This document shows positions 2,235 to 17,248 of a stretch of DNA of 64,000 nt, one piece after another (the first letter of the stretch is position 1; every line of letters starts with the position of its first letter). The translations under genes and the position numbers were made by a program. Location of the stretch: contig NW_026262690.1 in assembly GCF_021869535.1 (NCBI RefSeq), positions 83,948,001 to 84,012,000 on the forward strand. Direction: 5' to 3'. This DNA comes from Mytilus californianus. Lineage: Eukaryota. The notes under the pieces are model-generated. The model was not told the origin of the DNA and ran no database searches. It was given only the letters and a program-made list of their open reading frames with translations.

Positions 2235-2708
2235 TTATTAATGAATGAGCTATTTAATGAGTTAACAAAACTTGATATAAACAAAGCATCTGGTATGGAT
2301 AATATAGGACCAAAAATTCTAAGATTAAGCGCCCCTGTTATTGCATCACCTCTCACATACATATTTAATCGAATGATAGATACTGGTATATATCCTTCTT
2401 TACTGAAGAATGCTAAGGTAACACCAGTTTTCAAGGATGGTGACAAGCTTTTAGCAACAAATTACAGACCTATATCTGTTCTTCCAACTTTATCAAAATT
2501 AATAGAAAGACATTTTTCTAATAATATGTACAAATACTTATCTAAACTTAAACTTTTACACCCTACACAATCTGGTTTCAGGCCGCAGCATTCTTGTCAA
2601 ACTGCACTTATTAATATCATTGACAAATGGTTGCAAGAAATGAATGATGGCAATTTAAACCTAGCAATTTTATTAGATTTTAAAAAAGCTTTTGATTTGG
2701 TAGATCAT
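2235..2708 (+). mobile_element. 5'-truncated CR1/L2-group LINE, left part (RT N-terminal region)
   Basis: KASGMDNI, NYRPISVLP, QSGFRP and DFKKAFDLVDH motifs; the exact 5' boundary is uncertain. Confidence 0.9.
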
Positions 2709-3102
2709 TGTAACACAATTGTGTTCCATACGATAATCATCAGGAAGTAACTACATACAGCAAAACCGAGACGATTACATGTAACCTTTAGACACTTAAT
2801 AACAATCTGTACGAATATTATTGACATATATCCTGCAGCCACTAAATGACCATGTCTACTGTGAAATAACATGTATCCGTCAGGGGTTAATTGCATAGTT
2901 TGACAATTAACCACAGACTAGTATTACTCCACAACCAGACTACTACGTAACCGGCCTACAGCTATGGACCGTTTGTATGGACCACTAGACTATATAAGAT
3001 CTCTCATTTTGGACTTCAAGACACAATTCGATCACACCAGAATTCGTCAGATCTCGGCCAGTGTCTCAGTGAAAAACATTTATTTGAACTTTTAATCGCT
3101 CT
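2709..3102 (+). repeat. LTR copy 1, 3'-truncated (394 of 464 bp); keeps TATA (2991-2997) but lacks AATAAA
   Basis: Matches 3703-4096 by eye; breaks off at ...TTTAATCGCTCT and joins env-tail sequence. Confidence 0.95.
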
Positions 3103-3103
3103 A

Positions 3104-3702
3104 AATGCCACGAACGATGGGTACCAAATGGTGACAACGCAAATGGTTGGGACAGAAGTACCTGATTCCAGAGAGAAGATTCCCTCTGCACCATTACTCA
3201 AAGACGATGCAAGACCGAAGACCGATGCTACCAGTCTCTTGAGAAAGATGTACCCAGAGCTAGATACGTCGACTACTTCGTAAAAGGACTGGATTGTAAA
3301 CCATACAACGTAGACGACCGAATCCACTAGCAGAAGACGAACCGTGTAAATAATTTTAAAAGTGACCCTATGAACTGTGTAAATAGAATTGTATAAACAT
3401 TTGTTCCTACCCAGTATTGAGGAACAACTTACTATGATGGTGATGGAAATAAAACATGAACTATGTATACCGAAATATTGAACTTATGATTAGAATGAAC
3501 TATGTGTAAATATATCCAGCTATTAGACTTGATGAATGTGATGAACTTATTATATCATGATATTGGACTCGTAGAACTTTATAAACTTTAGATATGTGGT
3601 GATGGTTACCGGAAACCTTACAATAAACTATTAGAATAACCTACAGGAAGAAAAATACCGTATTTTATTGAACTTTCGTTCTATTTTGGAGGGAGGGCAT
3701 TA
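3104..3702 (+). repeat. Duplicate of env C-terminal tail + 3' UTR + PPT (copy of 12039-12639)
   Basis: Near-identical to 12039-12639. Differences seen: TCG vs TCC (3271 vs 12207) and TTGTTCCTACCC vs TTGCGTTCTTACCC (2-bp indel plus substitution). Confidence 0.95.
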
Positions 3703-4166
3703 TGTAACACAATTGTGTTCCATACGATAATCATCAGGAAGTAACTACATACAGCAAAACCGAGACGATTACATGTAACCTTTAGACACTTAATAACAAT
3801 CTGTACGAATATTATTGACATATATCCTGCAGCCACTAAATGACCATGTCTACTGTGAAATAACATGTATCCGTCAGGGGTTAATTGCATAGTTTGACAA
3901 TTAACCACAGACTAGTATTACTCCACAACCAGACTACTACGTAACCGGCCTACAGCTATGGACCGTTTGTATGGACCACTAGACTATATAAGATCTCTCA
4001 TTTTGGACTTCAAGACACAATTCGATCACACCAGAATTCGTCAGATCTCGGCCAGTGTCTCAGTGAAAAACATTTATTTGAACTTTTAATCGCTCTTTGA
4101 ATACTTGTAAATTAAGCAATAAATTCTAATTGACAAGTATTAGTTAACTTAATTGACTTCGCAACA
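3703..4166 (+). repeat. LTR copy 2 (full 464 bp; functional 5' LTR)
   Basis: TGTAACA...GCAACA; TATATAA at 3985-3991; AATAAA at 4118-4123; no differences from 12640-13103 seen by eye. Confidence 0.97.
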
Positions 4167-4176
4167 TAAGTCAAAT

Positions 4177-4185
4177 TGGTGCCGT
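4177..4185 (+). promoter_or_regulatory. Primer-binding-site-like sequence TGGTGCCGT
   Basis: TGG start 10 nt after the LTR end; 9-nt complementarity to the typical metazoan tRNA-His 3' end (8 nt to tRNA-Phe). Confidence 0.6.
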
Positions 4186-4239
4186 TCAGACCAAGGATCA
4201 ACCAGGACTTCTAACCACTATACGATAGAAAGGAACCAC

Positions 4240-4245
4240 GTAAGT
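4240..4245 (+). promoter_or_regulatory. Putative major splice donor (CAC|GTAAGT) in the leader, upstream of the gag ATG
   Basis: Consensus GTAAGT between PBS and gag start, the usual retroviral position. Confidence 0.65.
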
Positions 4246-4275
4246 TGCAATTACCATAGCTTTCATTCTTTTTTA

Positions 4276-5430
4276 ATGGATAACCAAGATACTTCTATGT
4301 CAGCACAAAAAGTAGAATTAGCTTTCAATGGTGTCGCGAACGAACTTCATGGGTTAAGGGAAGTAGTTACTATTCAAGGCGATGTAGCCGCCGAACTAAA
4401 AGGGTTAAAATCAGCCATTTGTTCTCAAAACGTAGTTCAAGGAATAACGCCTTTTGAAGGTAATACGAAAGATTTTAAAGCCTGGATTAAGTCAATTGAA
4501 AAATATGCTTTACTTTTTAATGATAGGGATCGAATTAAGGAAATAGCTTTTCAAACATGTAAAGGGGCTTGTTCAGATTACATACAAAGGTATTTAAGAG
4601 ACCATCGGGATACCACTTGGGAACAATTAAAAAAAGAATTAACTTCAAGGTTTGGAGAAATTACGGACCCTCAACATGCGTCAACTCTTTTGAGACAATT
4701 AAAACAAAAAGGGGACGAGTCTGTTCAAATTTATGCAGAAAATTTATTGAATTTGGCAAATGAGGCATATTCAGATTTAGATGGAAATAATGAAGCTATA
4801 GAAAGGGAACTCGTAGGCATTTTTATAGATGGTTTGGCTCATTCTTATTTAAAAATGAAATTAATGAGAGAAAACCCAGCTACTTTTTCTTTGGCAGTTA
4901 AAAGTGCAATGACTGAACAAAATTTGAGAAAAAGATTTACTTTAAGAACGGAAAGGGTAGACGAACCAAGGTATAAAACAATAAGACCAATGACATTAAC
5001 TAGACCACGACGGACTGAACCTTTGAACTCTCATGAACCAATGGAAATTGATCATTATCGTGATGCAAAACGTTGTTATTCTTGTGGTAAAGTAGGTCAT
5101 GTATCACGTGATTGTCGTTCTGGGGGAAATTTGAGACAAATTAATGCCGTAGAAATGCAAACATATCACGGAAATTCGGGTAGAAACAGGGAAATTAATT
5201 GTTATTCTTGTGGTAAGGTAGGACATATAGCACGAGATTGTCGTTCTAGGGGAACATATAGACAAGTAAATGCAGTTGAAACGCAACAATATCAAGGGAA
5301 TTCGGGAAGAAATAATGAGATAATTTGTTATCAGTGTAATCAACGGGGACATATTAGGCCAAATTGCCCAAATAGAAAACCTAGGACTGTTAACATGGTA
5401 GAAAACTGGGGTGTATATCAGGAAAACTAA
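4276..5430 (+). CDS. gag: Gag (capsid-like region plus three CCHC zinc knuckles)
   Basis: First ATG at 4276 within ORF 4153-5430; retrotransposon-gag-like core (TWEQLKKELTSRF), PMEID motif, three CX2CX4HX4C knuckles. Confidence 0.93.
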   Translation: MDNQDTSMSAQKVELAFNGVANELHGLREVVTIQGDVAAELKGLKSAICSQNVVQGITPFEGNTKDFKAWIKSIEKYALLFNDRDRIKEIAFQTCKGACSDYIQRYLRDHRDTTWEQLKKELTSRFGEITDPQHASTLLRQLKQKGDESVQIYAENLLNLANEAYSDLDGNNEAIERELVGIFIDGLAHSYLKMKLMRENPATFSLAVKSAMTEQNLRKRFTLRTERVDEPRYKTIRPMTLTRPRRTEPLNSHEPMEIDHYRDAKRCYSCGKVGHVSRDCRSGGNLRQINAVEMQTYHGNSGRNREINCYSCGKVGHIARDCRSRGTYRQVNAVETQQYQGNSGRNNEIICYQCNQRGHIRPNCPNRKPRTVNMVENWGVYQEN

Positions 5431-8400
5431 AGCGCTCTTGTCACGTTGAAGCCGGTGATAAGAGTAAAATTGAAAAGAAATTACCTACTTATTCTATAAA
5501 TGTTGCAGGAGCTCCAAATTCAACTTTAATCAAAATTCAAAATCAAAGATATAGAGCTCTCGTAGATTCAGGCGCTAGTGTTTCTTTGATACACAAAAGA
5601 ATTTTTGAAACTTTGAGGGATAAACCAAAATTACTAAAGAAAACGGCTAACTTACAGTCCGTAAATGGGGGGTCTTTACATGTAGAAGGTTGTGCAAACC
5701 TTACATTTAAAATAGGTAGTACAAAAGTTACTCAATTATTTTATGTTGTTAGAGACATGAACAGAAATGTTATTTTAGGAAAAGATTGGTTAGTACAAAA
5801 TGGAGTTAGGTTATATTTTGATTTAGGATGTTTAAGAATTCAAAAAAATTATGTTCCATTAGAAGAAGATATTAATGTGGCTTCAATTGTAAGATTAACC
5901 GTAAATGCCGTATTAAAACCACAAACAATTAATGTTTGTCCCGTAGGCCTTAAGAACAATCCAAGTTTTGGAAGTACTAAATTGTTAGAAATCTCACCTG
6001 TAGCTTCAGGGTATGTTAGTACAGAACCAGGCTTAATGATAAGTAATACGGTGGTTAATTTTAATAAAAATAGGAAGTTTCCTTTGATGATTGTAAATAA
6101 CACAAACAAATCAATTAGGTTAAGAAGAGGTTGTGTAGTAGGTAAGGCTTCTCATTTAGAAGAAATAAATTTAGTCAATGTTAATCAATCACAAGAAACT
6201 TCGGAACTCAAAAAGTTAGATGAGTCTGAAATAAGTGTACCACAAGAATTTAAAAAGGATATACTTAGAATGTTAAGGGATAATGAAGATATTTTTGCAA
6301 CTTCAGACAAAGATTTGGGGTGCACTGATACAGTGCAAATGACTATTGATACCGGGGATCATCCACCTATCAGATTAAAACCCTATAGGGCCCCTCTCAA
6401 TCAGAGAAAAATAATAGATAAGGCTATTGAGGAATTATTAGAGGCTAATATTATTAGGAAATCTAGGTCGGCTTGGGCTGCGCCTATTATTATCGTTTCT
6501 AAAAAGGATAAAACATCAAGGATGTGCGTGGACTATCGCAGCCTGAACGCAGCCAGTAAAATTTATTCCTTTCCGTTGCCCCTGATTGATGACTTGCTTG
6601 CTTCAGTAGGTAAAGCCAAAGTAATGACATCACTTGATTTAAAGTCAGGATATTATCAGGTAAAGGTCAAAGAGTCGGATAAGGAAAAGACTGCTTTTGT
6701 ATGTCACAAGGGATTATTTGAGTTCAATGTATTGCCATTTGGTCTCGCCTCAGGGCCCAGTTTATTTAGTGAATTAGTTACAGAGGTACTACAAGGGTTA
6801 GAACATTTTTCAACTGCTTACATAGATGACATTTTGATATTTTCCGAAACAGTGGAAGAACATTTAGGCCACATACAACAAGTTTTTGATAGATTAAGAC
6901 AACACAAACTAAAATTAAAATTGAAAAAATGTAATTTTATGCAAGATGAAACTAATTACTTAGGCTTTATAATAAGTAAAGATGGACTAAAACCGGATCC
7001 TGAAAAGGTTAAGGCCATTCAAGGCATGAAAGCTCCCTCGAATGTCAGGGAAGTTAGAGGATTAATAGGTTGTTTGAGTTATTATCGCAGATTTGTACCT
7101 TCATTTTCAAAAATTGCGGAGCCTATAGTTGCCTTAACTAGGAAAAACAAGGTTTTTGATTGGACCAACACTTGTCAAGTTGCTTTTGAAAAATTAAGGG
7201 GTGAATTAGTGAAAGTTCCCTTATTGGCATATCCAGATTTGAATAAACCATATGTGCTTTACACGGACGCTAGTGATAATTGTGTAGGTGCTTGTTTAAC
7301 GCAATTACAAGCCAGCCCAATAGAGGGTGAAAATGAAGTTGAAAGACCAATTTACTTCCTATCTCATAAATTGAGTGATACGCAAACACGTTGGTCAACC
7401 ATTGAAAAAGAAGCCTTTGCGATTCATTATGCCTTACAAAAATTGAATCATTATTTGTATAATGCTGAATTTGTGATAAAAACAGATCACAAACCTTTGA
7501 AATACATTCTGGAATCACCAATGCAAAATAAGAAAATTCAACTGTGGGCATTGAACATAACGGGTTATAACTGTACTATTCAGTATATTCCAGGGCCCCA
7601 AAACGTGTGTGCAGATTTTATGTCTAGATTACCTTCAGATGAAAAACGAAACGAAAATCCAGATCCGTATCCGGATATTAGTGACAATACTTACGAAATT
7701 AATGTGATTAATTCAAATAGATTTCATTTTTCTGATTATGCAAATAATGATAAATTAGTTGAAGATATTCCAGAAAAAGAAAATTTTCAGTTTGAAGAAT
7801 TTGATATGTCAATCGAACAAATGAAAGACAAAACATTACGTGAGTTAAAGGAACAACTTGTAAGCGATAAGGTACCCGAGGCAGTGCAAAACAAGTACAT
7901 CATAATAGATGACATACTTTATTACATTTCAAATGTAGATAATGATCCTATTATAAGGTTGTACATACCATCTCATATAAAACAAGCAGTTGTAGAACAA
8001 TATCATGATAAGAATGGGCACATGGGCATTGACAAAACATTTGATTCCATTCGTCAAAAATATTTTTGGCCAAACATGTTTAAGGAATTGTATAATTATG
8101 TCACTACTTGTGTACCTTGTCAATCACGCAATTTACAAAAGGTTAGAGCGCCAATTCAGGAAACAAAAATTCCGCCTTATCCTTTTTGTCATGTAGGGGT
8201 AGATTTGAGTGGACCGTATCCAACTACCATGTCAGGTAACAGGTACATTATAGGATTTATCGATTTATACTCAGGGTGGCCAGAAGCTTTTAGTGTCGCA
8301 ACAAAAAGCACTGACAATGTTGCACATCTTTTGATTGAAGAAATTACTTCAAGGCATTCTGGGATTCAAATTCTAACAAGTGATAACGGAGGGGAAAACT

Positions 8401-9524
8401 GTTCTAAGGCTATGGAGGAAGTTTGTAAGGAACTTAATATAAAGCATATTAAAACTTCATTCTATCACCCTCAGGGTAATGCTAAAATAGAAAGATTTCA
8501 TAGAACATTACATGATGTTTTGTCAAAATTAATAGAAGATCATTCCACAACTTGGGATTTATACTTGAACCAAGCTTTAGCAGCAATTAGATTCAATATC
8601 AATGAGTCCACCCAACTTTCACCTTTTTATGCATTATATAACAGGGATCCAGTTTTACCTTTAGATAACATTTTACAGCCTAGGAGAAAATACAATGGGG
8701 AAGAATATCATAAAATTGCCTTGCAACAACAACATAAATCATTTATGTTGGTTCATAAAACCATGAAAAAATCTAAGCAGAAACAAGCTAAGTACGCAAA
8801 CAAACATAGCAAAGATATAAGGTTTGAGGTAGGAAACCCAGTTTTTTATAAAAATCATAGAAGGGCAAGCAAACTTTCAAAAAAATGGACTCCGTACTAT
8901 AGGATTATAGAACAAACTTCACCTGTTAGTTTTATTTTAAAAAATCAGTTAGATGGGACAACCACAAAGGCTCATGCTGAACAAATTCGTTTGGCTAAGT
9001 TAGATTGGGAAATTCCTAACAACAATCAAGGTAGGACATTACGTAAAGCTGCATATGTAGTTCCCATTGAGTCACAATCAGAAGACTCCTCTGATGATGA
9101 AAGCATAGATTCAGACACTCCGTTAAATCAAATTGCAAAAAGATATAAAAAAGAAAGGGAAAATTCTGATGAAGAAGATGATATACCATTAATGGAGTTA
9201 TCTAAAAAATTAAGGGGGAAGAAAATTTTCTCAGAACAAAATAATGTCAATAATAGTGAAATAGAAAGTGATGATCAAATCATAAAAGAAGAAGTAGAAA
9301 ATTCGTCTACTAATTCTGAAGTTTCTGACATTGATGATAAAATGTCCAGCAGTCACTCTTCGCCTGTTGAATCTGAAATTTCCGACATGGAAGATAACAT
9401 GTCTGTAAACCGGGTTAAAATAAAAAATAATCGGAAACCAACTGATAATGGGGCTAACGAAACAAAATTGGTAACCAAGGAACATGTACAAAATTTAGTA
9501 AGGGCTTTAATAGGTATTATGTAG
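5394..9524 (+). CDS. pol: Pol polyprotein: aspartic protease, RT, RNase H, integrase with GPY/F-like module and acidic tail
   Basis: Frame open from 5394 with LVDSGASVS protease motif upstream of the tracked ORF start; RT (RMCVDYR, LPFGL, YIDD); RNase H (YTDAS, EKEAFA, TDHKPL); IN HHCC (HDKNGH...CVPC) and DDE core. Confidence 0.97.
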   Translation, partial: HGRKLGCISGKLKRSCHVEAGDKSKIEKKLPTYSINVAGAPNSTLIKIQNQRYRALVDSGASVSLIHKRIFETLRDKPKLLKKTANLQSVNGGSLHVEGCANLTFKIGSTKVTQLFYVVRDMNRNVILGKDWLVQNGVRLYFDLGCLRIQKNYVPLEEDINVASIVRLTVNAVLKPQTINVCPVGLKNNPSFGSTKLLEISPVASGYVSTEPGLMISNTVVNFNKNRKFPLMIVNNTNKSIRLRRGCVVGKASHLEEINLVNVNQSQETSELKKLDESEISVPQEFKKDILRMLRDNEDIFATSDKDLGCTDTVQMTIDTGDHPPIRLKPYRAPLNQRKIIDKAIEELLEANIIRKSRSAWAAPIIIVSKKDKTSRMCVDYRSLNAASKIYSFPLPLIDDLLASVGKAKVMTSLDLKSGYYQVKVKESDKEKTAFVCHKGLFEFNVLPFGLASGPSLFSELVTEVLQGLEHFSTAYIDDILIFSETVEEHLGHIQQVFDRLRQHKLKLKLKKCNFMQDETNYLGFIISKDGLKPDPEKVKAIQGMKAPSNVREVRGLIGCLSYYRRFVPSFSKIAEPIVALTRKNKVFDWTNTCQVAFEKLRGELVKVPLLAYPDLNKPYVLYTDASDNCVGACLTQLQASPIEGENEVERPIYFLSHKLSDTQTRWSTIEKEAFAIHYALQKLNHYLYNAEFVIKTDHKPLKYILESPMQNKKIQLWALNITGYNCTIQYIPGPQNVCADFMSRLPSDEKRNENPDPYPDISDNTYEINVINSNRFHFSDYANNDKLVEDIPEKENFQFEEFDMSIEQMKDKTLRELKEQLVSDKVPEAVQNKYIIIDDILYYISNVDNDPIIRLYIPSHIKQAVVEQYHDKNGHMGIDKTFDSIRQKYFWPNMFKELYNYVTTCVPCQSRNLQKVRAPIQETKIPPYPFCHVGVDLSGPYPTTMSGNRYIIGFIDLYSGWPEAFSVATKSTDNVAHLLIEEITSRHSGIQILTSDNGGENCSKAMEEVCKELNIKHIKTSFYHPQGNAKIERFHRTLHDVLSKLIEDHSTTWDLYLNQALAAIRFNINESTQLSPFYALYNRDPVLPLDNILQPRRKYNGEEYHKIALQQQHKSFMLVHKTMKKSKQKQAKYANKHSKDIRFEVGNPVFYKNHRRASKLSKKWTPYYRIIEQTSPVSFILKNQLDGTTTKAHAEQIRLAKLDWEIPNNNQGRTLRKAAYVVPIESQSEDSSDDESIDSDTPLNQIAKRYKKERENSDEEDDIPLMELSKKLRGKKIFSEQNNVNNSEIESDDQIIKEEVENSSTNSEVSDIDDKMSSSHSSPVESEISDMEDNMSVNRVKIKNNRKPTDNGANETKLVTKEHVQNLVRALIGIM
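5421..5464 (+). promoter_or_regulatory. -1 programmed ribosomal frameshift signal: G GAA AAC slippery site plus downstream stem-loop
   Basis: Heptamer 5421-5427 directly before the gag stop; pol is in the -1 frame and open from 5394; 7-nt spacer, then a 10-bp stem CTCTTGTCAC (5435-5444) / GTGATAAGAG (5455-5464) with one G-U pair. Confidence 0.8.
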
Positions 9525-9628
9525 GTATCAATTGGCTTTATAGGTCGTAAGAAGGATGCAAATCATTTAAAAATTTCTAAAACTTATAAACTATGTAATA
9601 AAACTAGTATTTATTCTCATTTTACAGA

Positions 9629-10132
9629 ATGGCAGACAATGAAGAAAGCTTTGCCCAGCTAGAATCCCTCTATTTGTGGAAACTATTACCTGATAATTTA
9701 TGGTGGGACATATATGTAAAATTTAAGATCAATTATTTCCGGGAAATACTAGATAGAAAGAGAAGGGAACCTCTATTTAAGGAATTCCACGCTATACAGA
9801 AGCTTATTAACCTGTCGGATCCAATTATAATTGACAATTATTGTGGTTTACCCACAAAATTCGCAGAAATAATTGGACGCCGGAAACAATTTGCCGAAAT
9901 ACATAACTTATCCTATCAGGAGCATCTTAGGAAGTGGACGGTGGAGAACTTCAAAGCCATTGGATGGTTAAAACGATCCAATCGCTTTGGGGTTTACCAC
10001 CAAGAAGTGATTCTAAACAAGGCAAGGAAAATGCACCGGATACGCATTTTCGATCTGATCATTAAATTTGAGACTGTGAAGGAAAACAACCAAACATTTT
10101 ATTCAGGACTATCATATGAATTCCAAAATTGA
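9629..10132 (+). CDS. Accessory ORF of unknown function (167 aa, basic, no evident TM segment) between pol and env
   Basis: Uninterrupted ORF with agaATGG start, 1 nt after a strong acceptor (TTATTCTCATTTTACAG, AG at 9626-9627); lies inside an otherwise intact element. Confidence 0.75.
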   Translation: MADNEESFAQLESLYLWKLLPDNLWWDIYVKFKINYFREILDRKRREPLFKEFHAIQKLINLSDPIIIDNYCGLPTKFAEIIGRRKQFAEIHNLSYQEHLRKWTVENFKAIGWLKRSNRFGVYHQEVILNKARKMHRIRIFDLIIKFETVKENNQTFYSGLSYEFQN

Positions 10133-10202
10133 TAAAGGCCAGATAAATAAAATATATTATGATAATTTATATATGTATCATTATTTTTAGGGAGAACCAG
10201 TG

Positions 10203-12218
10203 ATGAAGTGGTGGTGGTTCTCACTTATTCTTTTTGGCTTAACCAGCCAATTCATTGTCAAGGAAAATGTCATGTTTCAAAAAATTAAGGAAATATCAAC
10301 CACAAGGTCAAATTGGCTCATTACTTTTGTCGTAGACTTGGATCCTTTTGAATTATTTCTTAATAAAATAGAACAAGACTTGGGCAAGGCTTTTCTCGCT
10401 ACACAAAAAGTTCACACAATTTCTATGTTTTACACCCCAGAAAAAAAACACATTTTGGCTACTATCTTAAGTCTACAAAGGGAGGTTGAAGGATTAAATC
10501 GGACAAAAGATTATTTACAATCACAATTCAATGATTACCAATCTTTATATTACGACGAAACGGCAAAGTTTAAAACTAAACGTAGCTTATTTCCTATTAT
10601 AGGCAAAGCATTAAGTTTTTTATTTGGTACTGTATCAGACAGCGACCTGTCAAAAATTCGAAGAAATATCAAAACTTTGGCACAAAATCAAGATGCAATT
10701 CGTCATATTGTTCAAGATGGGTTAACTATCTTAAACACTACACAAACACATGTTTCTGAAAATAGACACAAGGTTAATGAGTTGATTGAAAGTGTTCAAG
10801 ATCTTGGAAATAGACTTCAAACTTTTGCTACGGATTTAGAAAAACAAATTGAAGTTATGGGAAGTTATTTACAAGCTTATTTGCATATGGACATGATAAT
10901 AGGTGAAATAAAGGACCTTATGAATATAGCCGGGGATTATTTAAACCATTTGCAATTACAACTAAACATGTTGTCCTTAGGACACATGTCACCCAGTCTT
11001 ATATCACCCGGTAATTTACGAGTATTATTGACTGACATAAAACGACGACTACCGGCGACATTAAAGATACCTGGTGACGAAGTTAAAGATATTTGGAATT
11101 TTTATAAATTTTTGACCTGTAGTACAGTTTTGGACGAAAACAAAATAATCATTATCATTACGTTACCATTACTAGATATAAGAGACACTTATGAAATTTA
11201 TAAGATTCACAACTTGCCTGTTCCTACTACGATAACTGATAAACAATCTGACTCGAGCAATATGGTTGCTCAGTATGAATTAGAAGCAGAAGTTATTGCT
11301 GCAAACCAAGAAAAAACTAAATATATGCTGCTAAATACCAATGAAATTGACAAGTGTTCCAATCCTTTAGTTAATTTTTGTGAAATTAAAAGTCCAGTTT
11401 ATCCAGTTAATTTAAGTAAATTATGTATCATAGCCTTATTTGCCAATAAAGAAAATTGGAAAACAAGATGTACAGTGAAAGTACGACCAAACACAATTTT
11501 GCCTATGGCAACTTATTTGACCGATAGTATGTGGGCAGTTACAACCATTAATGAATTTAGAATCACTATTAGATGTGATGACAATACAAACATGTTGACG
11601 GATCAGATAATTAATCCTCCTACCACTATAATTAATTTAAAGCGAACTTGTACCGCTACGAGTGATCATTTGACCTTATTACCTACTTATCAAATGGAAA
11701 GTACATTTTTAACAGAAAAAACGTTCGAAAGATTCTTAAATACCTTTCAAGTACTGAATACAAGTTTATGGGAACCCTTTCATGCTGCTTTGCCAAATTT
11801 TACAAAGCTTGAACTACCAAGAGAACTAAAGGCGATTAAACAAATTCCTATGAACGCTTTGATTGAAAAACTTAGAAATTTAAGGGGAATTGAAAACGAT
11901 TTTGAATTTCCAAATTGGGGAGTAGGTTTATCCCTGGGTTTGGGTGCGATATTCATTGGAATAGCTATATTTTTGTACTGTAAGTTTTTTAGAAACAAAT
12001 CTTGGTTAGCCAAAAAGAAAGGTGTGAGTTCGGGTTCTAATGCCACGAACGATGGGTACCAAATGGTGACAACGCAAATGGTTGGGACAGAAGTACCTGA
12101 TTCCAGAGAGAAGATTCCCTCTGCACCATTACTCAAAGACGATGCAAGACCGAAGACCGATGCTACCAGTCTCTTGAGAAAGATGTACCCAGAGCTAGAT
12201 ACGTCCACTACTTCGTAA
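10203..12218 (+). CDS. env: Envelope glycoprotein, class I fusion protein of the F type (baculovirus F / gypsy Env-like)
   Basis: Signal peptide MKWWWFSLILFGLTSQ; basic cleavage site KFKTKR then fusion-peptide-like SLFPIIGKALSFLFG; heptad-rich and Cys-rich ectodomain; N-glycosylation sequons; C-terminal TM and cytoplasmic tail; acceptor TTATTTTTAG at 10181-10190. Confidence 0.9.
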   Translation: MKWWWFSLILFGLTSQFIVKENVMFQKIKEISTTRSNWLITFVVDLDPFELFLNKIEQDLGKAFLATQKVHTISMFYTPEKKHILATILSLQREVEGLNRTKDYLQSQFNDYQSLYYDETAKFKTKRSLFPIIGKALSFLFGTVSDSDLSKIRRNIKTLAQNQDAIRHIVQDGLTILNTTQTHVSENRHKVNELIESVQDLGNRLQTFATDLEKQIEVMGSYLQAYLHMDMIIGEIKDLMNIAGDYLNHLQLQLNMLSLGHMSPSLISPGNLRVLLTDIKRRLPATLKIPGDEVKDIWNFYKFLTCSTVLDENKIIIIITLPLLDIRDTYEIYKIHNLPVPTTITDKQSDSSNMVAQYELEAEVIAANQEKTKYMLLNTNEIDKCSNPLVNFCEIKSPVYPVNLSKLCIIALFANKENWKTRCTVKVRPNTILPMATYLTDSMWAVTTINEFRITIRCDDNTNMLTDQIINPPTTIINLKRTCTATSDHLTLLPTYQMESTFLTEKTFERFLNTFQVLNTSLWEPFHAALPNFTKLELPRELKAIKQIPMNALIEKLRNLRGIENDFEFPNWGVGLSLGLGAIFIGIAIFLYCKFFRNKSWLAKKKGVSSGSNATNDGYQMVTTQMVGTEVPDSREKIPSAPLLKDDARPKTDATSLLRKMYPELDTSTTS

Positions 12219-12624
12219 AAGGACTGGATTGTAAACCATACAACGTAGACGACCGAATCCACTAGCAGAAGACGAACCGTGTAAATAATTTTAAAAGTGA
12301 CCCTATGAACTGTGTAAATAGAATTGTATAAACATTTGCGTTCTTACCCAGTATTGAGGAACAACTTACTATGATGGTGATGGAAATAAAACATGAACTA
12401 TGTATACCGAAATATTGAACTTATGATTAGAATGAACTATGTGTAAATATATCCAGCTATTAGACTTGATGAATGTGATGAACTTATTATATCATGATAT
12501 TGGACTCGTAGAACTTTATAAACTTTAGATATGTGGTGATGGTTACCGGAAACCTTACAATAAACTATTAGAATAACCTACAGGAAGAAAAATACCGTAT
12601 TTTATTGAACTTTCGTTCTATTTT

Positions 12625-12634
12625 GGAGGGAGGG
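12625..12634 (+). promoter_or_regulatory. Polypurine tract GGAGGGAGGG (second copy at 3688-3697)
   Basis: Purine run ending 5 nt before the LTR start. Confidence 0.85.
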
Positions 12635-12639
12635 CATTA

Positions 12640-13103
12640 TGTAACACAATTGTGTTCCATACGATAATCATCAGGAAGTAACTACATACAGCAAAACCGA
12701 GACGATTACATGTAACCTTTAGACACTTAATAACAATCTGTACGAATATTATTGACATATATCCTGCAGCCACTAAATGACCATGTCTACTGTGAAATAA
12801 CATGTATCCGTCAGGGGTTAATTGCATAGTTTGACAATTAACCACAGACTAGTATTACTCCACAACCAGACTACTACGTAACCGGCCTACAGCTATGGAC
12901 CGTTTGTATGGACCACTAGACTATATAAGATCTCTCATTTTGGACTTCAAGACACAATTCGATCACACCAGAATTCGTCAGATCTCGGCCAGTGTCTCAG
13001 TGAAAAACATTTATTTGAACTTTTAATCGCTCTTTGAATACTTGTAAATTAAGCAATAAATTCTAATTGACAAGTATTAGTTAACTTAATTGACTTCGCA
13101 ACA
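12640..13103 (+). repeat. LTR copy 3 (3' LTR, 464 bp)
   Basis: Same sequence as 3703-4166; AATAAA at 13055-13060; followed by TSD TCAT. Confidence 0.97.
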
Positions 13104-14440
13104 TCATGACATTCTTTGCTTAAAGCTTGAAATTTATGGATTTAGTGAGGCTACTGTTAGTTTTTTCAAGTCATACCTGAATAACAGAAAACAGCAGGTA
13201 AACATTTGTAATGTTTACTCTAAACAACAACATGTAAAATTTGGTGTACCCCAAGGTTCTATACTTGGTCCTCTATTGTTTGTGCTATTTATAAACGACC
13301 TTCCCTTATGCATTGAAAATTGTGAAACAGACCTATATGCTGATGACACCACTCTTCAGAAATCAGGGAAAAACATAGAAAATATACATGATGATGTTCA
13401 AGAAGATTTATACAGGGTTGAAGAGTGGTGCAAAATGAATAGCATGTTCATTAATGCAAACAAAACAAAATGTTTAGTTACTGGAACAAAGCAGAAACTA
13501 TCAATTCAGACTTATCAACCAAACTTGATAATAAATTCAAAAGTATTACAAAATTCTTCATGTGAAAAATTATTAGGTGTTAAAATTGACAGCACACTTA
13601 GCTGGAGAAATCAAATTGACCAAGTTTGTGCTAATATATCATCCAGAATATACCTTCTTTCTAAAATAAAGAAATTTTTAGATATAAATGCAAGGAAAAC
13701 ATATTACAATGGGTATATTCTGCCCCTGATTGACTACTGCTGTATTATTTGGGGTGAATGTAAAAATGAAGGGATAACAAGAATTTTAAAACTCCAAAAA
13801 AGGGCAGCAAGATTAATTCTAGATGCAGATCCTTTATCCCCCTCAGCCCCCTTATTTAAAGAACTTGGGTGGATGACAGTTGACAATAGAATCAAATACC
13901 ACAAATATTTACTTCTATATAAATGTATGCGTATGGAAGCTCCAATGTACCTAGTTCAAAGTTTAAACTGAAATCAGATAATAATCCTTACTCCTTGAGA
14001 GGTGTCACTCAAGGTAATATGATAGTTCCTAAACCAAAAGCTGAGCTATTTAAGAAATCTTTTGTTTATTCTGGATCAGTGTTATGGAATGGACTACCAC
14101 ACAAAATGCGTAAAGCTCAAAACGCTTATACTTTTAAACAAAGTATCAAGAAGTACTTAACACAGTCCTGATAAGATTATGTTTTCTACAATGTATTTGT
14201 ATATTCTTTTATTTTTATTTTTATTTGATTTTTTGACTACATGTGCATCTTGAACAGCCTTATATCTTATCATGTTAGTAATATTACATTGAACTAATTG
14301 ACTGTAAATTAACTATGTGTAAATATCTGTTTTTGATTGTATTGTAATTTGTATGTGAGGGCCTCAGGGAAGATTAGTCTATTGTAACTAACTGAGTTTA
14401 CCCTCTTTAAATAAAGAATTTATTATTATTATTATTATTA
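13104..14440 (+). mobile_element. Same LINE, right part: rest of RT, 3' UTR, AATAAA and (TTA)n tail
   Basis: Removing the LTR element and one TCAT restores DLVDH-DILCLKLEIYG in frame; GVPQGSILGP and YADD motifs; one frameshift near 13953; AATAAA at 14410-14415 and TTA repeats to 14440. Confidence 0.92.
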
Positions 14441-14623
14441 AAGTTTAATTAATTAACCCTGTCAGAAAGTAAAGATTATCTACACATTTGAGTTTTTAAA
14501 TAATTCAAGTGAAATAATATTTATCCACATCAAGCTGGTGCAAAGGATATGATAAACTAGTATGCACTTCTGCTAATTGTTAAAAAGTTTTGTTGATGTT
14601 GTTGTTCGACACTAACCTCAACA

Positions 14624-14832
14624 GAATGCACGCACATTTAAATAAATAGAAGTTCTGGTTTCATTCATTCTTTCTGTAAACAAGCATTGTTCACTATTCA
14701 GATCACCAGTTATGACATAACCTACCCGAATGCACGCACATTTAATAAATAAATGGAAGTTCGGGTTCATTCATTCTGTCTGTGAACAGGCACTGTCCAC
14801 TATTCAGATCACCAAGCTATGACATGACTTAC
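14624..14832. repeat. Two-copy tandem duplication, period about 104 bp
   Basis: GAATGCACGCACATTTAA... starts at 14624 and 14728. Confidence 0.85.
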
Positions 14833-17248
14833 CTGTTCTTTAAAAGGGTAAATGCAAGTTTTAAAAAACATGTTTATAAAGTATTTCAATAGTATTGCGA
14901 AATAGTTGTTTACGAATGCATTATTACTCAGGCATATGTTACGTTTATGTAATATTCCAAATTTAAATATAACCTTAATTACATTCTCAGTAAATAATCC
15001 ATAGGTATAAAGTGGAGATCTACCTTGATGTATATGTCTCTGAGATGTATCGGGGTATGTGAGGTGAATAACCTGTTCATATACATGTAATGTGAACAGT
15101 TCGAAACAAGTTCAAGGATTTAAAATATTTAATGCAATTCACAACTTTGTATAATTTATGTTAATGAGATGATGACTTTTCTTGATAGTATCGGCTTTGT
15201 TTTGATTGGGGAATTTATTTATGAAACATAAAATATTTTACAGTCTGGAAATTTTCTTAGGTCGCTTGAGTATGTCAGACATATGAAAACCTTTACACGA
15301 ACCATCTTTATAACTTTATAACTATTGATTGTGGTTAGCTTAACATCCTGATGGATTTTTTTTTTAGACATATGCAGGACGACCAGGAGATATTACAAAT
15401 TTCTGCTGCATTTGTTTCACTAATGGGTTCCATACTTGAAAGTTGGAGAAGTCTTTTGGATGTAAAACTTATCACAATATAAAGATTTTTCAAGTTTTGT
15501 TTTGTATACGTGATTATAAAATGTTATTTTGACGCTCTATGTATTTACATTTTAAATTGCTAATTAATGCATTTGATTACATGTTCAATGTTACGACAAC
15601 ATGTTGATCCTCAAAGAACACAAAAAAGCTGTCATTCTGTTAATTTAAGTTTTAAAATAACTATACATTTGAAATAAATTTAGGAGAAATTACTCCTACC
15701 GTTTATACCGTTTATACCAAATAAATCCGCTATAGTACGATTCTGGAAAATTGGTCGACGGGGATGAAGGGCTGGAATTTAGACCGTTATGGTTAAAAAG
15801 TTTCCTTATAGTAGTTCAAATACAACCCTTCAAAGATTTACTGCAAGGGTTCTTTCATGTGCAAATTAGCGACACTCTTCTTTGATGGGACTTTGGATTC
15901 ACTGTTCCAATCTCGAGGACGTGTTTGCATATTTGTACATTCCACAAATTTGGATGACCCGGCAGCAGACACAGCTCGCACAATGTAGGACTTTGAACGA
16001 CTAACGGCAATCCCCTCGTACATAATTAAAACTGTAAAACTAACAGCAGAAGGGAAGGGGAAATCATTTATGAGAGAGAATCGGGAACAAACGGATTAAA
16101 TTTATTTTTTCACAGTGCGAACATTTAAAGTATAAAGGGCTCCTACGCATCGGTCAATTTTATTTTACTCCAATAAAGCTTCAAATTAAAAACATTTAAT
16201 TTTAAATAAACTCATCATAGATACTAGGCTTAACATTGTGTACAAAAGACTCATCACTGACGCTCGAATAATAAAAGCAAAATAAAAGCAAAATAAAGTA
16301 CAAGTTTGAGAGCATTGAAGACCCAAAATTCCGAAACTACATCAACCACATATCCTTTCTGTTCACGTTCGTATTAACCTTCATACTACAATGTGTTCTT
16401 TTCTTTTACGTATTGTTTTTACTACATCTGGATATATTAATTTTGAGTAGTCTCTTCTAGCATTGATTTTAGTATTTCATATTGATTTTACATTCTTCCT
16501 TTTTCTAGTTTTAAGGTATTCTATGTCCGTTGCCGAGATAATTTAATATAATATATTTTCCACTATTGATTTAAAAATTCGAATTTTACATGAAATATGA
16601 ATATTTGTATTAGCAAATACGATTTAAATTATATAGTTTCACATTAAACGTTGAATTTAAAATATATACAGATAAAACATACTTTTGAGCTATACTAAAA
16701 AAGAGGGACGAAAGATACCAGAGGGACAGTCAAACTCATAGATCAAAAACAAACTGACAACGCCATGGCCAAAAATAAAAAGACAAATAGACAAATTATA
16801 GTACAGATAAAATTAGGACAAATTCTCTTAAATTCTTCGATAACTTGTATCTTTTTTCTACAAATCATTACTATCCTTTCTAAAGCAAATACAAGACAGT
16901 ACAATCAACTCTTTAAAAACTAAATTAATTTAAATGTTTAAAAATAAATTTATTTCATTTAAATTCTGAGGTCACGACACATTTACCTGATGGTTTCATT
17001 TTCCATGTCTTACTTATAAATTTCTTTTATAACAAAACATCTTTGTACACCTGGTATTCGAACAATCGACATCAAACTTATCACACCTCTGTATATATAA
17101 TAATATGATCACTTTAAATTTCTCACAATGTGGTCAGAAGTAGTAACTCTGGACAAGTAAACATTAAGGTCTTATAAGGTCAAAAGTCTGGTAAATAAAA
17201 TATATAGAATTCACCGAGGCGTGACGAGTCTGTACATACACAGTAGCA

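What the first reader, a model, noticed from the sequence alone, without database searches (positions are those of the whole stretch)
2709..13103. Intact, very young complex retrovirus-like Ty3/gypsy element in an apparently molluscan genome (gag, pol, accessory ORF, env)
Seen: four uninterrupted ORFs, LTRs identical by eye, PBS, PPT, TSD, a frameshift signal and splice signals. Known: env-bearing Ty3/gypsy elements (errantiviruses) with F-type Env are well characterised in insects, where they move between cells. Inference: this is a potentially infectious, recently active endogenous retrovirus-like agent. Its four-ORF, multiply spliced layout is more like a complex retrovirus than a simple gypsy element.
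Basis: partly seen in the sequence, partly recalled or inferred. Interest (0 to 1): 0.9.

Follow-up and report, generated by a model that had tools for sequence, protein, structure and literature searches.

The report
Young env-bearing gypsy retroelement in mussel
This is a recently inserted, fully open copy of a multi-copy, envelope-carrying Ty3/gypsy retroelement of the California mussel; the kind was published in 2023-2026, but this family adds a small, fast-evolving fourth gene found only in Mytilus, and this copy has a rearranged 5' end.

Summary
The observation largely holds. Window 2709-13103 is one LTR retroelement with TG...CA ends and a 4-bp target duplication (TCAT). It sits inside the reverse-transcriptase ORF of a LINE. 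It has four uninterrupted ORFs: gag, pol (PR-RT-RH-IN, -1 frame), ORF3 (167 aa) and env (671 aa).

The host is Mytilus californianus. Five RefSeq loci on five different sequences encode env proteins 1-3 residues from this one, in a star-like pattern, so the family is young and multi-copy.

Env is F-type. Relatives carry Pfam Baculo_F, and the predicted structure matches baculovirus F and paramyxovirus/pneumovirus F.

Corrections:
- The LTR is 464 bp, and the 5' end is not a plain LTR. It is LTR positions 1-394, then a 600-bp duplicate of the env 3' end, 3'UTR and PPT, then a full LTR.
- The gag/pol overlap has no canonical slippery heptamer.
- The splice signals are well placed but unverified. 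"Multiply spliced" is not shown.

Env-bearing Ty3/gypsy elements in molluscs are already published (Chary & Hayashi, eLife 2026). ORF3 may be new. It is statistically real, has its own candidate splice acceptor, is found only in Mytilus elements, and is far more diverged than its neighbours.

The parts
2241..2708 (+). Upstream half of the LINE (non-LTR) reverse-transcriptase ORF into which the element inserted. Includes the left target-site copy TCAT at 2705-2708.
   Evidence: Pfam RVT_1 profile positions 6-84, E 4.5e-11. Sequence read.
2709..3102 (+). Truncated LTR copy at the element's left end (LTR positions 1-394). Starts with TG, contains the TATA box at 2991-2998 and lacks the AATAAA.
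   Evidence: 100% identical over 394 bp to 3703-4096 and 12640-13033. Sequence read.
3103..3702 (+). Duplicate of the last ~180 nt of env, the whole 3'UTR and the polypurine tract (equivalent to 12039-12639).
   Evidence: 99.2% identity over 605 aligned columns, with 2 mismatches and 2 indels, one of them at the junction. It encodes the same residues as the env C-terminus.
3703..4166 (+). Full 464-bp LTR on the 5' side (TG...CA). TATA at 3985-3992, AATAAA at 4118-4123.
   Evidence: 100% identical to the 3' LTR over 464 bp. Sequence read.
4177..4194 (+). Primer-binding-site-like 18-mer that begins with TGG, 10 nt after the LTR. The tRNA is not identified.
   Evidence: Sequence read. No tRNA gene in the window for comparison.
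4240..4245 (+). Candidate major splice donor GTAAGT in the leader, between the PBS and the gag ATG.
   Evidence: One of only two GTAAGT sites in the 10.4-kb element. Not verified by RNA data.
4276..5430 (+). gag (384 aa from the first ATG): capsid-like domain and three CCHC zinc knuckles. Knuckles 1 and 2 lie in a 126-nt tandem duplication (5073-5324).
   Evidence: Pfam Retrotrans_gag 2.9e-08, Ty3_capsid 4.8e-07, zf-CCHC 7.2e-18. Knuckles located, tandem repeat.
5394..9524 (+). pol (1376 codons, open, -1 relative to gag, 34-nt overlap at 5394-5427). Domains: protease ~5529-5813 (DSG), RT ~6498-6974 (YIDD), RNase H ~7161-7568, integrase zinc finger ~7965-8132, integrase core ~8235-8471, then a ~350-aa C-terminal extension with no Pfam match.
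   Evidence: Pfam RVP/gag-asp_proteas, RVT_1 6.4e-36, RT_RNaseH 3e-31, Integrase_H2C2 4.4e-19, rve 1.2e-11. Frames, motifs. The C-terminal part is about 50% identical in Lottia gene models.
9611..9627 (+). Candidate splice acceptor (pyrimidine tract + CAG) that ends 1 nt before the ORF3 ATG.
   Evidence: Sequence read. Ranks within the best 9 of 307 YAG sites in the element by pyrimidine content. Not verified.
9629..10132 (+). ORF3 (167 aa): lineage-restricted accessory ORF with an acidic N-terminus and a basic core (aa 76-140), pI 9.4.
   Evidence: 0 of 20000 shuffles reach this ORF length. Homologues occur only in Mytilus elements, in the order pol-ORF3-env. No Pfam family. AlphaFold2 model has low confidence, pLDDT 40.
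10176..10190 (+). Candidate splice acceptor (T-rich tract + TAG) 12 nt before the env ATG.
   Evidence: Sequence read. Within the best 20 of 307 YAG sites. Not verified.
10203..12218 (+). env (671 aa), an F-type class I fusion glycoprotein. Features: signal peptide, furin-like KTKR at aa 124-127 (nt 10572-10583) followed by a hydrophobic fusion-peptide-like segment, long helices, 8 Cys, 7 N-glycosylation sequons, TM helix at aa ~572-595 (nt ~11916-11987), and a 76-aa tail with YQMV, PSAP and YPEL.
   Evidence: Translation. Relatives 33-43% identical carry Pfam Baculo_F. The profile of 46 relatives hits PDB 9w4d 'fusion protein' at 1.2e-13. AlphaFold2 model pLDDT 75.5. Foldseek matches RSV/NDV F and baculovirus F/Ld130. 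Motifs.
12625..12634 (+). Polypurine tract, 5 nt upstream of the 3' LTR. A second copy lies at 3688-3697.
   Evidence: Sequence read.
12640..13103 (+). 3' LTR (464 bp, TG...CA). TATA at 12922-12929, AATAAA at 13055-13060.
13104..13971 (+). Right target-site copy TCAT (13104-13107) and the downstream half of the interrupted LINE RT ORF.
   Evidence: Pfam RVT_1 profile positions 99-194, E 8.3e-13. Sequence read.

Best explanation
Window 2709-13103 is one recently integrated copy of a multi-copy, env-carrying Ty3/gypsy (Metaviridae) retroelement of Mytilus californianus. It is of the type published as 'ancient errantiviruses' with an F-type envelope.

Shown:
- The boundaries and the 4-bp target duplication.
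- 464-bp LTRs with a TATA box and AATAAA.
- Open gag, pol (PR-RT-RH-IN), ORF3 and env.
- F-type Env by homology and predicted fold.
- Five or more further near-identical env loci in the species.

Inferred, by analogy with retroviruses and Drosophila errantiviruses:
- Transcription starts in the LTR downstream of the TATA box.
- Gag is translated from the unspliced RNA, and Pol by a -1 shift in the 34-nt overlap.
- ORF3 and env are expressed from subgenomic RNAs that join the leader donor (4240) to acceptors at 9627 and 10190.
- Env is cleaved at KTKR by a furin-like protease, exposing a fusion peptide.
- Reverse transcription is primed at the PBS-like site and the PPT.

ORF3 is a genuine coding gene restricted to the Mytilus lineage. 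Its basic core, its small size, its own acceptor and its fast divergence fit an accessory regulatory or host-interaction protein. My leading guess, held at low confidence, is an RNA-binding or export factor in the manner of Rev or Cer1 CERV.

The composite 5' end (LTR 1-394 + env tail/3'UTR/PPT + full LTR) is best explained by a single backward template switch during plus-strand strong-stop DNA synthesis in the replication cycle that produced this copy. That would duplicate material at the left end only and leave the target duplication intact. The inner full LTR followed by the PBS still has the normal layout.
For: Boundaries, TSD and the split LINE RT.
Repeat structure.
Domains. Catalytic motifs DSG, YIDD, the HHCC-type finger and three CCHC knuckles.
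Host and copies: env is 668/671 identical to a RefSeq M. californianus protein. Five RefSeq loci on five different sequences encode 671-aa env proteins that differ pairwise by 1-3 residues.
F-type Env: Baculo_F in relatives at 6.8e-21, PDB profile hit at 1.2e-13, fold matches to RSV/NDV F at E~1e-10 and to baculovirus F at E~1e-21.
ORF3: 0 of 20000 shuffles reach its length. It is conserved and open in M. coruscus, M. edulis and one other assembly. Gene models keep the order pol-ORF3-env, with ORF3 64-77% identical while the flanking pol and env are 90-97%. The basic core is 80-94% conserved against 64-75% for the N-terminus.
Splice signals: GTAAGT occurs twice in 10.4 kb, once in the 99-nt leader, and both acceptors abut the ATGs.
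5' end: the junction shows 3-nt microhomology plus one extra base, the right LTR is simple and the TSD is intact.
Literature: PMC13524379.
Against: - No RNA, protein or particle data were available, so transcription, splicing, frameshifting, Env processing and ORF3 expression are all inferred.
- The overlap has no canonical slippery heptamer and no significant downstream structure.
- The PBS-like site is 10 nt from the LTR and its tRNA is unassigned.
- The window's own env does not reach the Pfam Baculo_F threshold. Membership rests on relatives and on predicted structure.
- ORF3 has no detectable homologue, domain or confident fold. Its high divergence could also mean relaxed constraint or recombination between lineages.
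- The 5' rearrangement could equally come from a tandem dimer followed by deletion, or from misassembly.
- No near-identical M. californianus pol protein is in the collection, so the state of pol in other copies is unknown.
Confidence: 0.8

Rival explanations
1. It is an ordinary three-gene env-bearing gypsy element. ORF3 is not a functional gene but a fortuitously open or decaying spacer ORF. The 'complex retrovirus-like' layout is then an illusion.
For: No domain, no confident fold and no homologue outside Mytilus. ORF3 is much more diverged than pol and env in the same gene models, as relaxed constraint would give. The published survey of such elements reports three ORFs only.
Against: 0 of 20000 shuffles of the spacer give an ORF this long in 34%-GC sequence. 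The frame stays open over 143-175 aligned residues in several diverged Mytilus versions at 64-80% identity, with a better conserved basic core. The ATG sits 1 nt after a textbook acceptor.
Confidence: 0.15
2. The composite 5' end arose after integration. Unequal recombination made a tandem LTR-internal-LTR-internal-LTR dimer, and a deletion of about 9.4 kb, mediated by microhomology, removed everything from LTR position 395 to the env tail of the first unit.
For: It yields exactly the observed order with an intact TSD. The junction has 3-nt microhomology. The duplicated env tails differ at a few positions while the LTR copies do not, which allows some time since the duplication.
Against: It needs two rare events in an element whose LTRs are still identical over 464 bp. 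The heterogeneity between the env-tail and LTR comparisons is not significant: my estimate is P about 0.05 from 2 non-junction events in 600 bp against 0 in 858 bp.
Confidence: 0.25
3. The composite 5' end is an assembly artefact of a repeat-rich long-read assembly. The real locus has a plain 5' LTR.
For: The region consists of near-identical repeats from a multi-copy family. One difference between the duplicates is a short indel.
Against: The junction LTR-394/env-tail does not exist in a normal element, so an assembler would need chimeric reads to create it. The flanks, the TSD and the rest of the element are coherent.
Confidence: 0.1
4. The env loci are domesticated host genes (co-opted fusogens annotated as LOC genes), not parts of an active element family.
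For: RefSeq annotates five 671-aa env proteins as 'uncharacterized protein LOC...', some with isoforms.
Against: In the window the env sits inside a complete LTR element with a TSD and open gag and pol. The env versions lie on five different sequences and differ by 1-3 residues in a star-like pattern. This is what a burst of copies gives, not a single conserved orthologue.
Confidence: 0.03

Closest known systems
'Ancient errantiviruses': env-carrying Ty3/gypsy elements of non-insect metazoans, including Mollusca (Chary & Hayashi, eLife 2026, PMC13524379; preprint 2023)
   Same: gag-pol-env order. F-type (paramyxovirus/baculovirus-like) Env. LTRs with a tRNA PBS. Multiple near-identical intact copies per genome, taken as recent transposition. 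Molluscan hosts.
   Different: That work describes three ORFs and does not mention splicing, frameshifting or an extra ORF. Here a fourth, Mytilus-restricted ORF sits between pol and env. I could not check whether this very family is in their catalogue, because no supplementary files are held. The RNase H 'mini-domain' criterion was not tested.
Drosophila errantiviruses (gypsy, ZAM, Idefix; genus Errantivirus, Metaviridae)
   Same: LTR element with gag, pol in the -1 frame and env after pol. Env of the baculovirus-F family with a furin-type site and fusion peptide. Env from a spliced subgenomic RNA (established knowledge; PMC3383448 was listed but not read).
   Different: Three ORFs only, and an insect host. 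The Pfam 'Gypsy' env model is not matched by this Env, and only marginally by a Haliotis relative (0.013). According to PMC13524379 the insect group carries a duplicated pseudo-RNase H; this was not tested here.
Baculovirus F (Ld130/Efp) envelope fusion proteins, and paramyxovirus/pneumovirus F
   Same: Same family or fold. Pfam Baculo_F in relatives. Best BFVD fold matches are baculovirus F proteins at E~1e-21. Best PDB matches are RSV and NDV F at E~1e-10. Shared layout: small N-terminal subunit, basic cleavage site, fusion peptide, long helices and a C-terminal TM.
   Different: Only 10-16% sequence identity to those proteins. Here the protein is encoded by a retroelement rather than a dsDNA or negative-strand RNA virus.
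CERV of Cer1, a Ty3/gypsy element of C. elegans (Sun et al. 2023, PMC10309623)
   Same: A lineage-restricted extra protein of a Ty3/gypsy element, made from a spliced mRNA and with no homologues outside the host genus. [quoted passage not shown] This is the best functional analogy for ORF3.
   Different: No sequence similarity was found. CERV is a 5-exon product that occupies the env position in an element without env. ORF3 is a single 167-aa ORF between pol and a genuine env. Its function is untested.
Complex retroviruses (Retroviridae with accessory genes)
   Same: More than gag-pol-env, a small basic accessory ORF near env, and a leader donor with alternative acceptors (candidate only).
   Different: The pol domains are those of Ty3/gypsy (RT_RNaseH, Integrase_H2C2). 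Env is F-type, not gamma- or beta-retroviral TM/SU. There is no homology of ORF3 to any known accessory protein, and multiple splicing is not shown.
Bdelloid rotifer LTR retrotransposons with captured extra ORFs (Rodriguez et al. 2017, PMC5408684)
   Same: Retrovirus-like Ty3/gypsy-type elements that carry varied additional ORFs. One lineage has a paramyxovirus-like F env.
   Different: Those extra ORFs are recognisable enzymes (dUTPase, GDSL esterase, DEDDy exonuclease) or occupy the ORF3/env slot. The Mytilus ORF3 is an orphan and coexists with env.

Membership tests
Ty3/gypsy LTR retrotransposons (Metaviridae) | pol domain order protease - RT - RNase H - integrase | tested here: met
   Pfam hits in that order along one open frame: RVP/gag-asp_proteas, RVT_1, RT_RNaseH, Integrase_H2C2, rve. 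DSG and YIDD motifs present.
Ty3/gypsy LTR retrotransposons (Metaviridae) | Direct LTRs ending TG...CA and a short (4-6 bp) target-site duplication | tested here: met
   464-bp LTR copies, 100% identical. TG at 2709, 3703 and 12640. CA at 4166 and 13103. TSD TCAT. The left LTR is truncated and followed by a duplication.
Ty3/gypsy LTR retrotransposons (Metaviridae) | Gag with capsid-like domain and CCHC nucleocapsid knuckles | tested here: met
   Retrotrans_gag, Ty3_capsid and zf-CCHC. Three CX2CX4HX4C knuckles.
Ty3/gypsy LTR retrotransposons (Metaviridae) | tRNA primer-binding site next to the 5' LTR and a polypurine tract next to the 3' LTR | tested here: inconclusive
   The PPT is clear, 5 nt before the LTR. 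A TGG-initiated 18-mer lies 10 nt after the LTR, but no tRNA could be matched.
Ty3/gypsy LTR retrotransposons (Metaviridae) | RT phylogenetic placement within the Ty3/gypsy clade | not tested
   No reference RT set was available. Only family-level Pfam domains and >1390 pol relatives of the same architecture were seen.
Env-carrying Ty3/gypsy ('errantivirus' in the broad sense of PMC13524379) | Intact env ORF within the LTRs, after pol | tested here: met
   671-aa ORF at 10203-12218 with a signal peptide and a C-terminal TM.
Env-carrying Ty3/gypsy ('errantivirus' in the broad sense of PMC13524379) | Env homologous to glycoprotein F (baculovirus/paramyxovirus type) or to herpesvirus gB | tested here: met
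   F type. Relatives hit Baculo_F, the profile hits PDB 9w4d, and fold matches go to RSV/NDV F and baculovirus F. The window's own Env is below the Pfam threshold.
'Ancient errantivirus' group of PMC13524379 | Bridge region with one RNase H plus a C-terminal 'mini' domain, as opposed to the pseudo-RNase H duplication of the insect group | not tested
Sequence shows only ~130 aa between the RNase H and the integrase zinc finger.
Genus Errantivirus in the strict sense (insect gypsy/ZAM/Idefix group) | Clusters with insect elements in pol phylogeny; Env matches the gypsy Env family | tested here: not met
   Pfam 'Gypsy' (PF07253) is not matched by this Env and only at 0.013 by a Haliotis relative. 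All close relatives with an organism name are molluscan. The phylogeny itself was not run.
Complex retroviruses (Retroviridae) | Accessory or regulatory genes expressed from alternatively or multiply spliced mRNAs | not testable with these tools
   A fourth ORF and candidate donor and acceptors exist. There are no RNA data. RefSeq lists two transcripts for the same protein at some env loci, which is only a hint.
Complex retroviruses (Retroviridae) | Retroviridae-type pol and TM/SU Env | tested here: not met
   The pol domains and relatives are Ty3/gypsy-type. Env is F-type.

The most novel reading that the evidence does not exclude
ORF3 is a true accessory gene of a Mytilus-specific lineage of F-type env-bearing Ty3/gypsy elements. 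It would be expressed from its own spliced mRNA and evolve rapidly, either because it regulates viral RNA (Rev/CERV-like) or because it counteracts a host defence. That would make this family the first 'complex' errantivirus-like agent described in a lophotrochozoan. The late-domain-like motifs (PSAP, YPxL) sit on the Env tail rather than on Gag and are enriched in relatives. This would point to an unusual division of budding functions.
Probability: 0.3. Interest if true: 0.65.

Novelty: new variant of a known kind. Interest (0 to 1): 0.42.

Why it matters
Env-carrying Ty3/gypsy elements are the invertebrate counterparts of retroviruses. Mussels are ecologically and economically important animals with known transmissible cell lineages and a poorly explored virome.

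This copy documents a very homogeneous, multi-copy family in M. californianus with all genes open. That is useful for annotation, because RefSeq currently lists the env copies as uncharacterised host genes. It is also useful for population and expression studies.

The added value over the published survey has three parts:
- A conserved but fast-evolving fourth ORF with its own candidate acceptor. If it is expressed, accessory-gene evolution, so far studied mainly in vertebrate retroviruses and in Cer1, also occurs in a molluscan lineage.
- A cleanly readable aberrant product of reverse transcription at the 5' end.
- Late-domain-like motifs on the Env tail.

None of this changes the picture of what such elements are.

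Tried and rejected
- Pfam on the window's own Env and on ORF3 gave no significant family. The coiled-coil hits (DUF948, LXG) are compositional.
- AlphaFold2 on ORF3 with three sequences gave pLDDT 40. No fold search was run on it because a low-confidence model gives meaningless matches.
- The exhaustive profile search for ORF3 returned six hits. One (P0093) is a repeat artefact, 29-32% identity over 40 residues repeated about 15 times. hhalign of ORF3 against the pol-env spacer of a divergent Mytilus element (P0033) found nothing.
- The exact-sequence look-up showed that the window's env, gag and ORF3 are not in the protein collection. The RefSeq hits are therefore other copies or haplotypes.
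- The rest of the window holds no other copy or fragment of the family.
- Rfam has nothing in the element.
- ARAGORN finds no tRNA gene in the window, so the PBS was not assigned.
- I considered a 1068-bp 'long LTR' (3100-4167 = 12036-13104) and rejected it. The TSD-defined left end at 2709 equals position 1 of the 464-bp unit, and the PPT abuts 12640.
- I considered that the junction at LTR position 394 marks the poly(A) site (a strong-stop transfer error) and rejected it, because the AATAAA lies downstream of it.
- I considered a minus-strand template switch and rejected it, because it would duplicate material at the right end.
- The antisense ORF at 11780-12262 has its first Met at codon 103 and was set aside as probably fortuitous.
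- Troyka elements (PMC12440569) were excluded. They have CG...CG ends, 3-bp TSDs and no env.

Full report
**1. What is there**

Repeat and self-BLAST analysis shows three copies of one unit in window 2709-13103. A 464-bp unit at 12640-13103 is 100% identical to 3703-4166. Its first 394 bp are also 100% identical to 2709-3102. A longer match, 3100-4167 to 12036-13104, is 99.5% identical and has 2 mismatches and 2 indels.

Reading the ends gives TG at 2709 and CA at 13103, flanked on both sides by TCAT.

The flanking ORFs 2241-2750 and 13090-13971 are two consecutive parts of one non-LTR reverse transcriptase. They match Pfam RVT_1 profile positions 6-84 and 99-194. I compared the two pieces apart and did not join them.

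**2. LTR structure: a correction**

The true LTR is 464 bp. A purine tract at 12625-12634 lies 5 nt before it. A TATA box lies at LTR positions 283-290 and AATAAA at 416-421.

The left end of the element is composite:
- LTR positions 1-394 (2709-3102).
- A duplicate of the last ~180 nt of env plus the 3'UTR and PPT (3103-3702).
- A complete LTR (3703-4166).
- A 10-nt spacer.
- A TGG-initiated PBS-like 18-mer (4177-4194).

The junction shows 3-nt microhomology and one extra base. Apart from the junction, the two env-tail copies differ by two mismatches and one short indel. The indel and one of the mismatches lie close together. The duplicated coding part specifies the same residues as the env C-terminus. 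The LTR copies show no difference over 464 and 394 bp.

**3. How the composite end most likely arose (inference)**

The left terminus is a correct U3 start, the right LTR is simple and the target duplication is intact. The most economical account is a backward template switch during plus-strand strong-stop synthesis, from LTR position 394 to a point ~600 nt upstream of the PPT. After the second strand transfer this duplicates material at the left end only.

Two alternatives cannot be excluded without reads or other haplotypes: a tandem dimer followed by a ~9.4-kb deletion, and misassembly. Two other models do not fit. A minus-strand switch would place the duplication at the right end. A poly(A)-site transfer is ruled out because the AATAAA lies downstream of the junction.

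The inner full LTR followed by the PBS retains the ordinary layout.

**4. Genes**

None of the four genes is broken: there are 0 stops and 0 frameshifts within each frame.

- **gag** (ATG 4276-5430) has Retrotrans_gag and Ty3_capsid domains and three CCHC knuckles. Two of the knuckles lie in a 126-nt tandem duplication.
- **pol** is open from 5394 to 9524 in the -1 frame and overlaps gag by 34 nt. It carries protease (DSG), RT (YIDD), RNase H, an integrase zinc finger and the integrase core. A ~350-aa C-terminal extension has no Pfam match but is about 50% identical in Lottia gene models.
- **The frameshift "signal"** is weaker than stated. There is no canonical X_XXY_YYZ heptamer in the overlap, only three sites with an A-site triplet; two of them read GAA_AAC in the gag frame. 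The 90 nt downstream fold no better than shuffles (z = -1.36). A -1 shift is still the only simple way to express pol, but it remains inferred. I never joined the two frames.

**5. Env**

The 671-aa product has:
- a signal peptide;
- a furin-like KTKR at residues 124-127, followed by a hydrophobic, glycine-containing segment;
- long helices, 8 cysteines and 7 N-glycosylation sequons;
- a TM helix at residues ~572-595 and a 76-residue tail.

Its own Pfam scan is empty of meaningful hits. However, 87 relatives were found. Many of them (Haliotis, Lottia, other Mytilus and unnamed assemblies, 33-43% identical) carry Baculo_F, confirmed at 6.8e-21 and 2.6e-17 for two Haliotis proteins. A profile of 46 relatives hits PDB 9w4d/9w4e 'fusion protein' at 1.2e-13.

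The AlphaFold2 model (pLDDT 75.5, pTM 0.64) matches post- and pre-fusion RSV F and NDV F in the PDB (probability 1.00, E~1e-10). Its best matches in BFVD are baculovirus F/Ld130 proteins (E~1e-21), followed by glycoproteins of chu- and arli-like viruses.

**6. Host, copy number and age**

The closest protein is RefSeq 'uncharacterized protein LOC127719850 isoform X1' of Mytilus californianus, 668/671 identical. Its 90% cluster holds five M. californianus loci on five different sequences, all 671 aa long. The six versions, window included, differ pairwise by 1-3 residues, and one version is a single residue from all the others. That star-like pattern is what a recent burst from one source gives.

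The window's exact env, gag and ORF3 are not in the collection, so this copy is a further locus or haplotype. Zero differences in 464 bp of LTR bounds divergence at about 0.65% (95% bound; my calculation). With an assumed, unmeasured neutral rate of 1e-9 to 1e-8 per site per year, this means less than roughly 0.3-3 million years.

"Young" is therefore supported. "Very young" is plausible from the env star pattern but is not tightly dated. No near-identical M. californianus pol protein is in the collection, so the state of pol in other copies is unknown.

**7. ORF3**

In the 675-nt spacer between pol and env, a 167-codon ATG-initiated ORF is far beyond chance: 0 of 20000 shuffles reach it, and the maximum seen was 139.

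Homologues exist only in Mytilus: three by the word-index search and six by an exhaustive profile search of 1.84 billion representatives, one of which is a repeat artefact.

In M. coruscus and M. edulis gene models the pieces occur in the order pol-ORF3-env. In the same models ORF3 is 64-77% identical to the window's ORF3, whereas the flanking pol and env parts are 90-97% identical.

The protein is basic overall (pI 9.4). It has an acidic N-terminus and a basic core at residues 76-140. The core is 80-94% conserved against 64-75% for the N-terminal part. It has no Pfam family, and its predicted structure has low confidence.

I conclude it is a real, lineage-restricted, fast-evolving gene. Its function is unknown. 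A regulatory RNA-binding or export role, or a host-interaction role, is a guess based on analogy with Rev-type proteins and with Cer1 CERV (PMC10309623).

**8. Splice signals**

GTAAGT occurs twice in the element. One copy is at 4240, within the 99 nt between the PBS-like site and the gag ATG. A pyrimidine tract plus CAG ends at 9627, 1 nt before the ORF3 ATG. A T-rich tract plus TAG ends at 10190, 12 nt before the env ATG. These acceptors rank within the best 9 and the best 20 of 307 YAG sites.

The placement is better than chance would give. My rough joint estimate is of order 1e-5, and it is post hoc. There are no RNA data here.

The candidate leader exon is non-coding, and ORF3 and env each lie wholly downstream of their acceptor. 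No joined exon model therefore had to be built or searched, and none was. RefSeq lists two transcript-derived accessions for the same protein at three env loci, which is only a hint of alternative transcripts. "Multiply spliced" is not supported; "two alternative acceptors" is the most that the sequence suggests.

**9. Comparison with what is known**

Chary & Hayashi (PMC13524379; preprint 2023, eLife 2026) searched invertebrate genomes, Mollusca included. They reported intact, often multi-copy gag-pol-env Ty3/gypsy elements with F-type or gB-type Env, and named the non-insect group 'ancient errantiviruses'. The kind, the host phylum, the Env type and the evidence for recent expansion are thus published.

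Their text does not mention splicing, frameshifting or an additional ORF, and their supplementary lists are not held. I therefore cannot say whether this family is in their catalogue.

Extra ORFs in LTR elements are known elsewhere: rotifers (PMC5408684), Cer1 CERV (PMC10309623) and plants. I found no description of an orphan ORF between pol and a genuine F-type env in a mollusc. I therefore file the finding as a new variant of a known kind, of moderate interest.

**10. Limits and disclosures**

That step is referred. As a consequence, genome-wide copy number, LTR identities and the ORF status of other copies were not determined.

Consensus lines printed by the alignment tool were not used.

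One slip: while thinking about which tRNA might fit the PBS, I recalled fragments of tRNA sequences from memory. I stopped, used none of them in any tool or claim, and the PBS is reported as unassigned.

Noticed in passing
window ~11988-12215 (env residues 596-671): The Env cytoplasmic tail carries YQMV, PSAP and YPEL, while Gag has no P[TS]AP, PPxY or YPxL. Among 46 Env relatives, [TS]AP occurs in the last 90 residues of 24 (against 6 of 278 background 90-residue windows). YPx(1-3)L occurs in 28 (against 24 of 278). These are late-domain-like or sorting motifs conserved on Env rather than on Gag.
   Followed up: partly
window 5073-5324: A 126-nt tandem duplication (79% identity) inside gag encodes zinc knuckles 1 and 2, 42 residues apart. 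Gag therefore has three CCHC knuckles.
   Followed up: partly
window 2241-2708 and 13104-13971: The insertion target is a LINE-type reverse-transcriptase ORF split by the element. The two pieces match consecutive parts of Pfam RVT_1. The LINE clade was not determined.
   Followed up: partly
window 11780-12262, minus strand (partial duplicate at 3016-3327): A 160-codon antisense ORF (GTG start) overlaps the env TM/tail region. Its first Met is at codon 103. It is probably fortuitous.
   Followed up: partly
window 27392-27787, plus strand: A 132-aa ORF matches the N-terminal part of the OATP (organic anion transporter polypeptide) family, E 2.5e-24. It is probably an exon of a host transporter gene about 14 kb downstream of the element.
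   Followed up: no
window 14608-14833: A short tandem or direct repeat, about 106-nt period and 85% identity, lies just downstream of the LINE fragment.
   Followed up: no
window 11980 and 12024: The only other GTAAGT in the element, and a GTGAGT, lie in the env TM/tail coding region. The GTGAGT lies shortly before the point where the 5' duplicate begins. No link between the two was established.
   Followed up: no
proteins P0003, P0005, P0011, P0035, P0096 (other Mytilus assemblies): Gene models in M. coruscus, M. edulis and M. galloprovincialis fuse pieces of this family's pol, ORF3 and env into single 'host' proteins. One is even named 'collagen, type VI, alpha'. These are annotation artefacts worth flagging.
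   Followed up: partly
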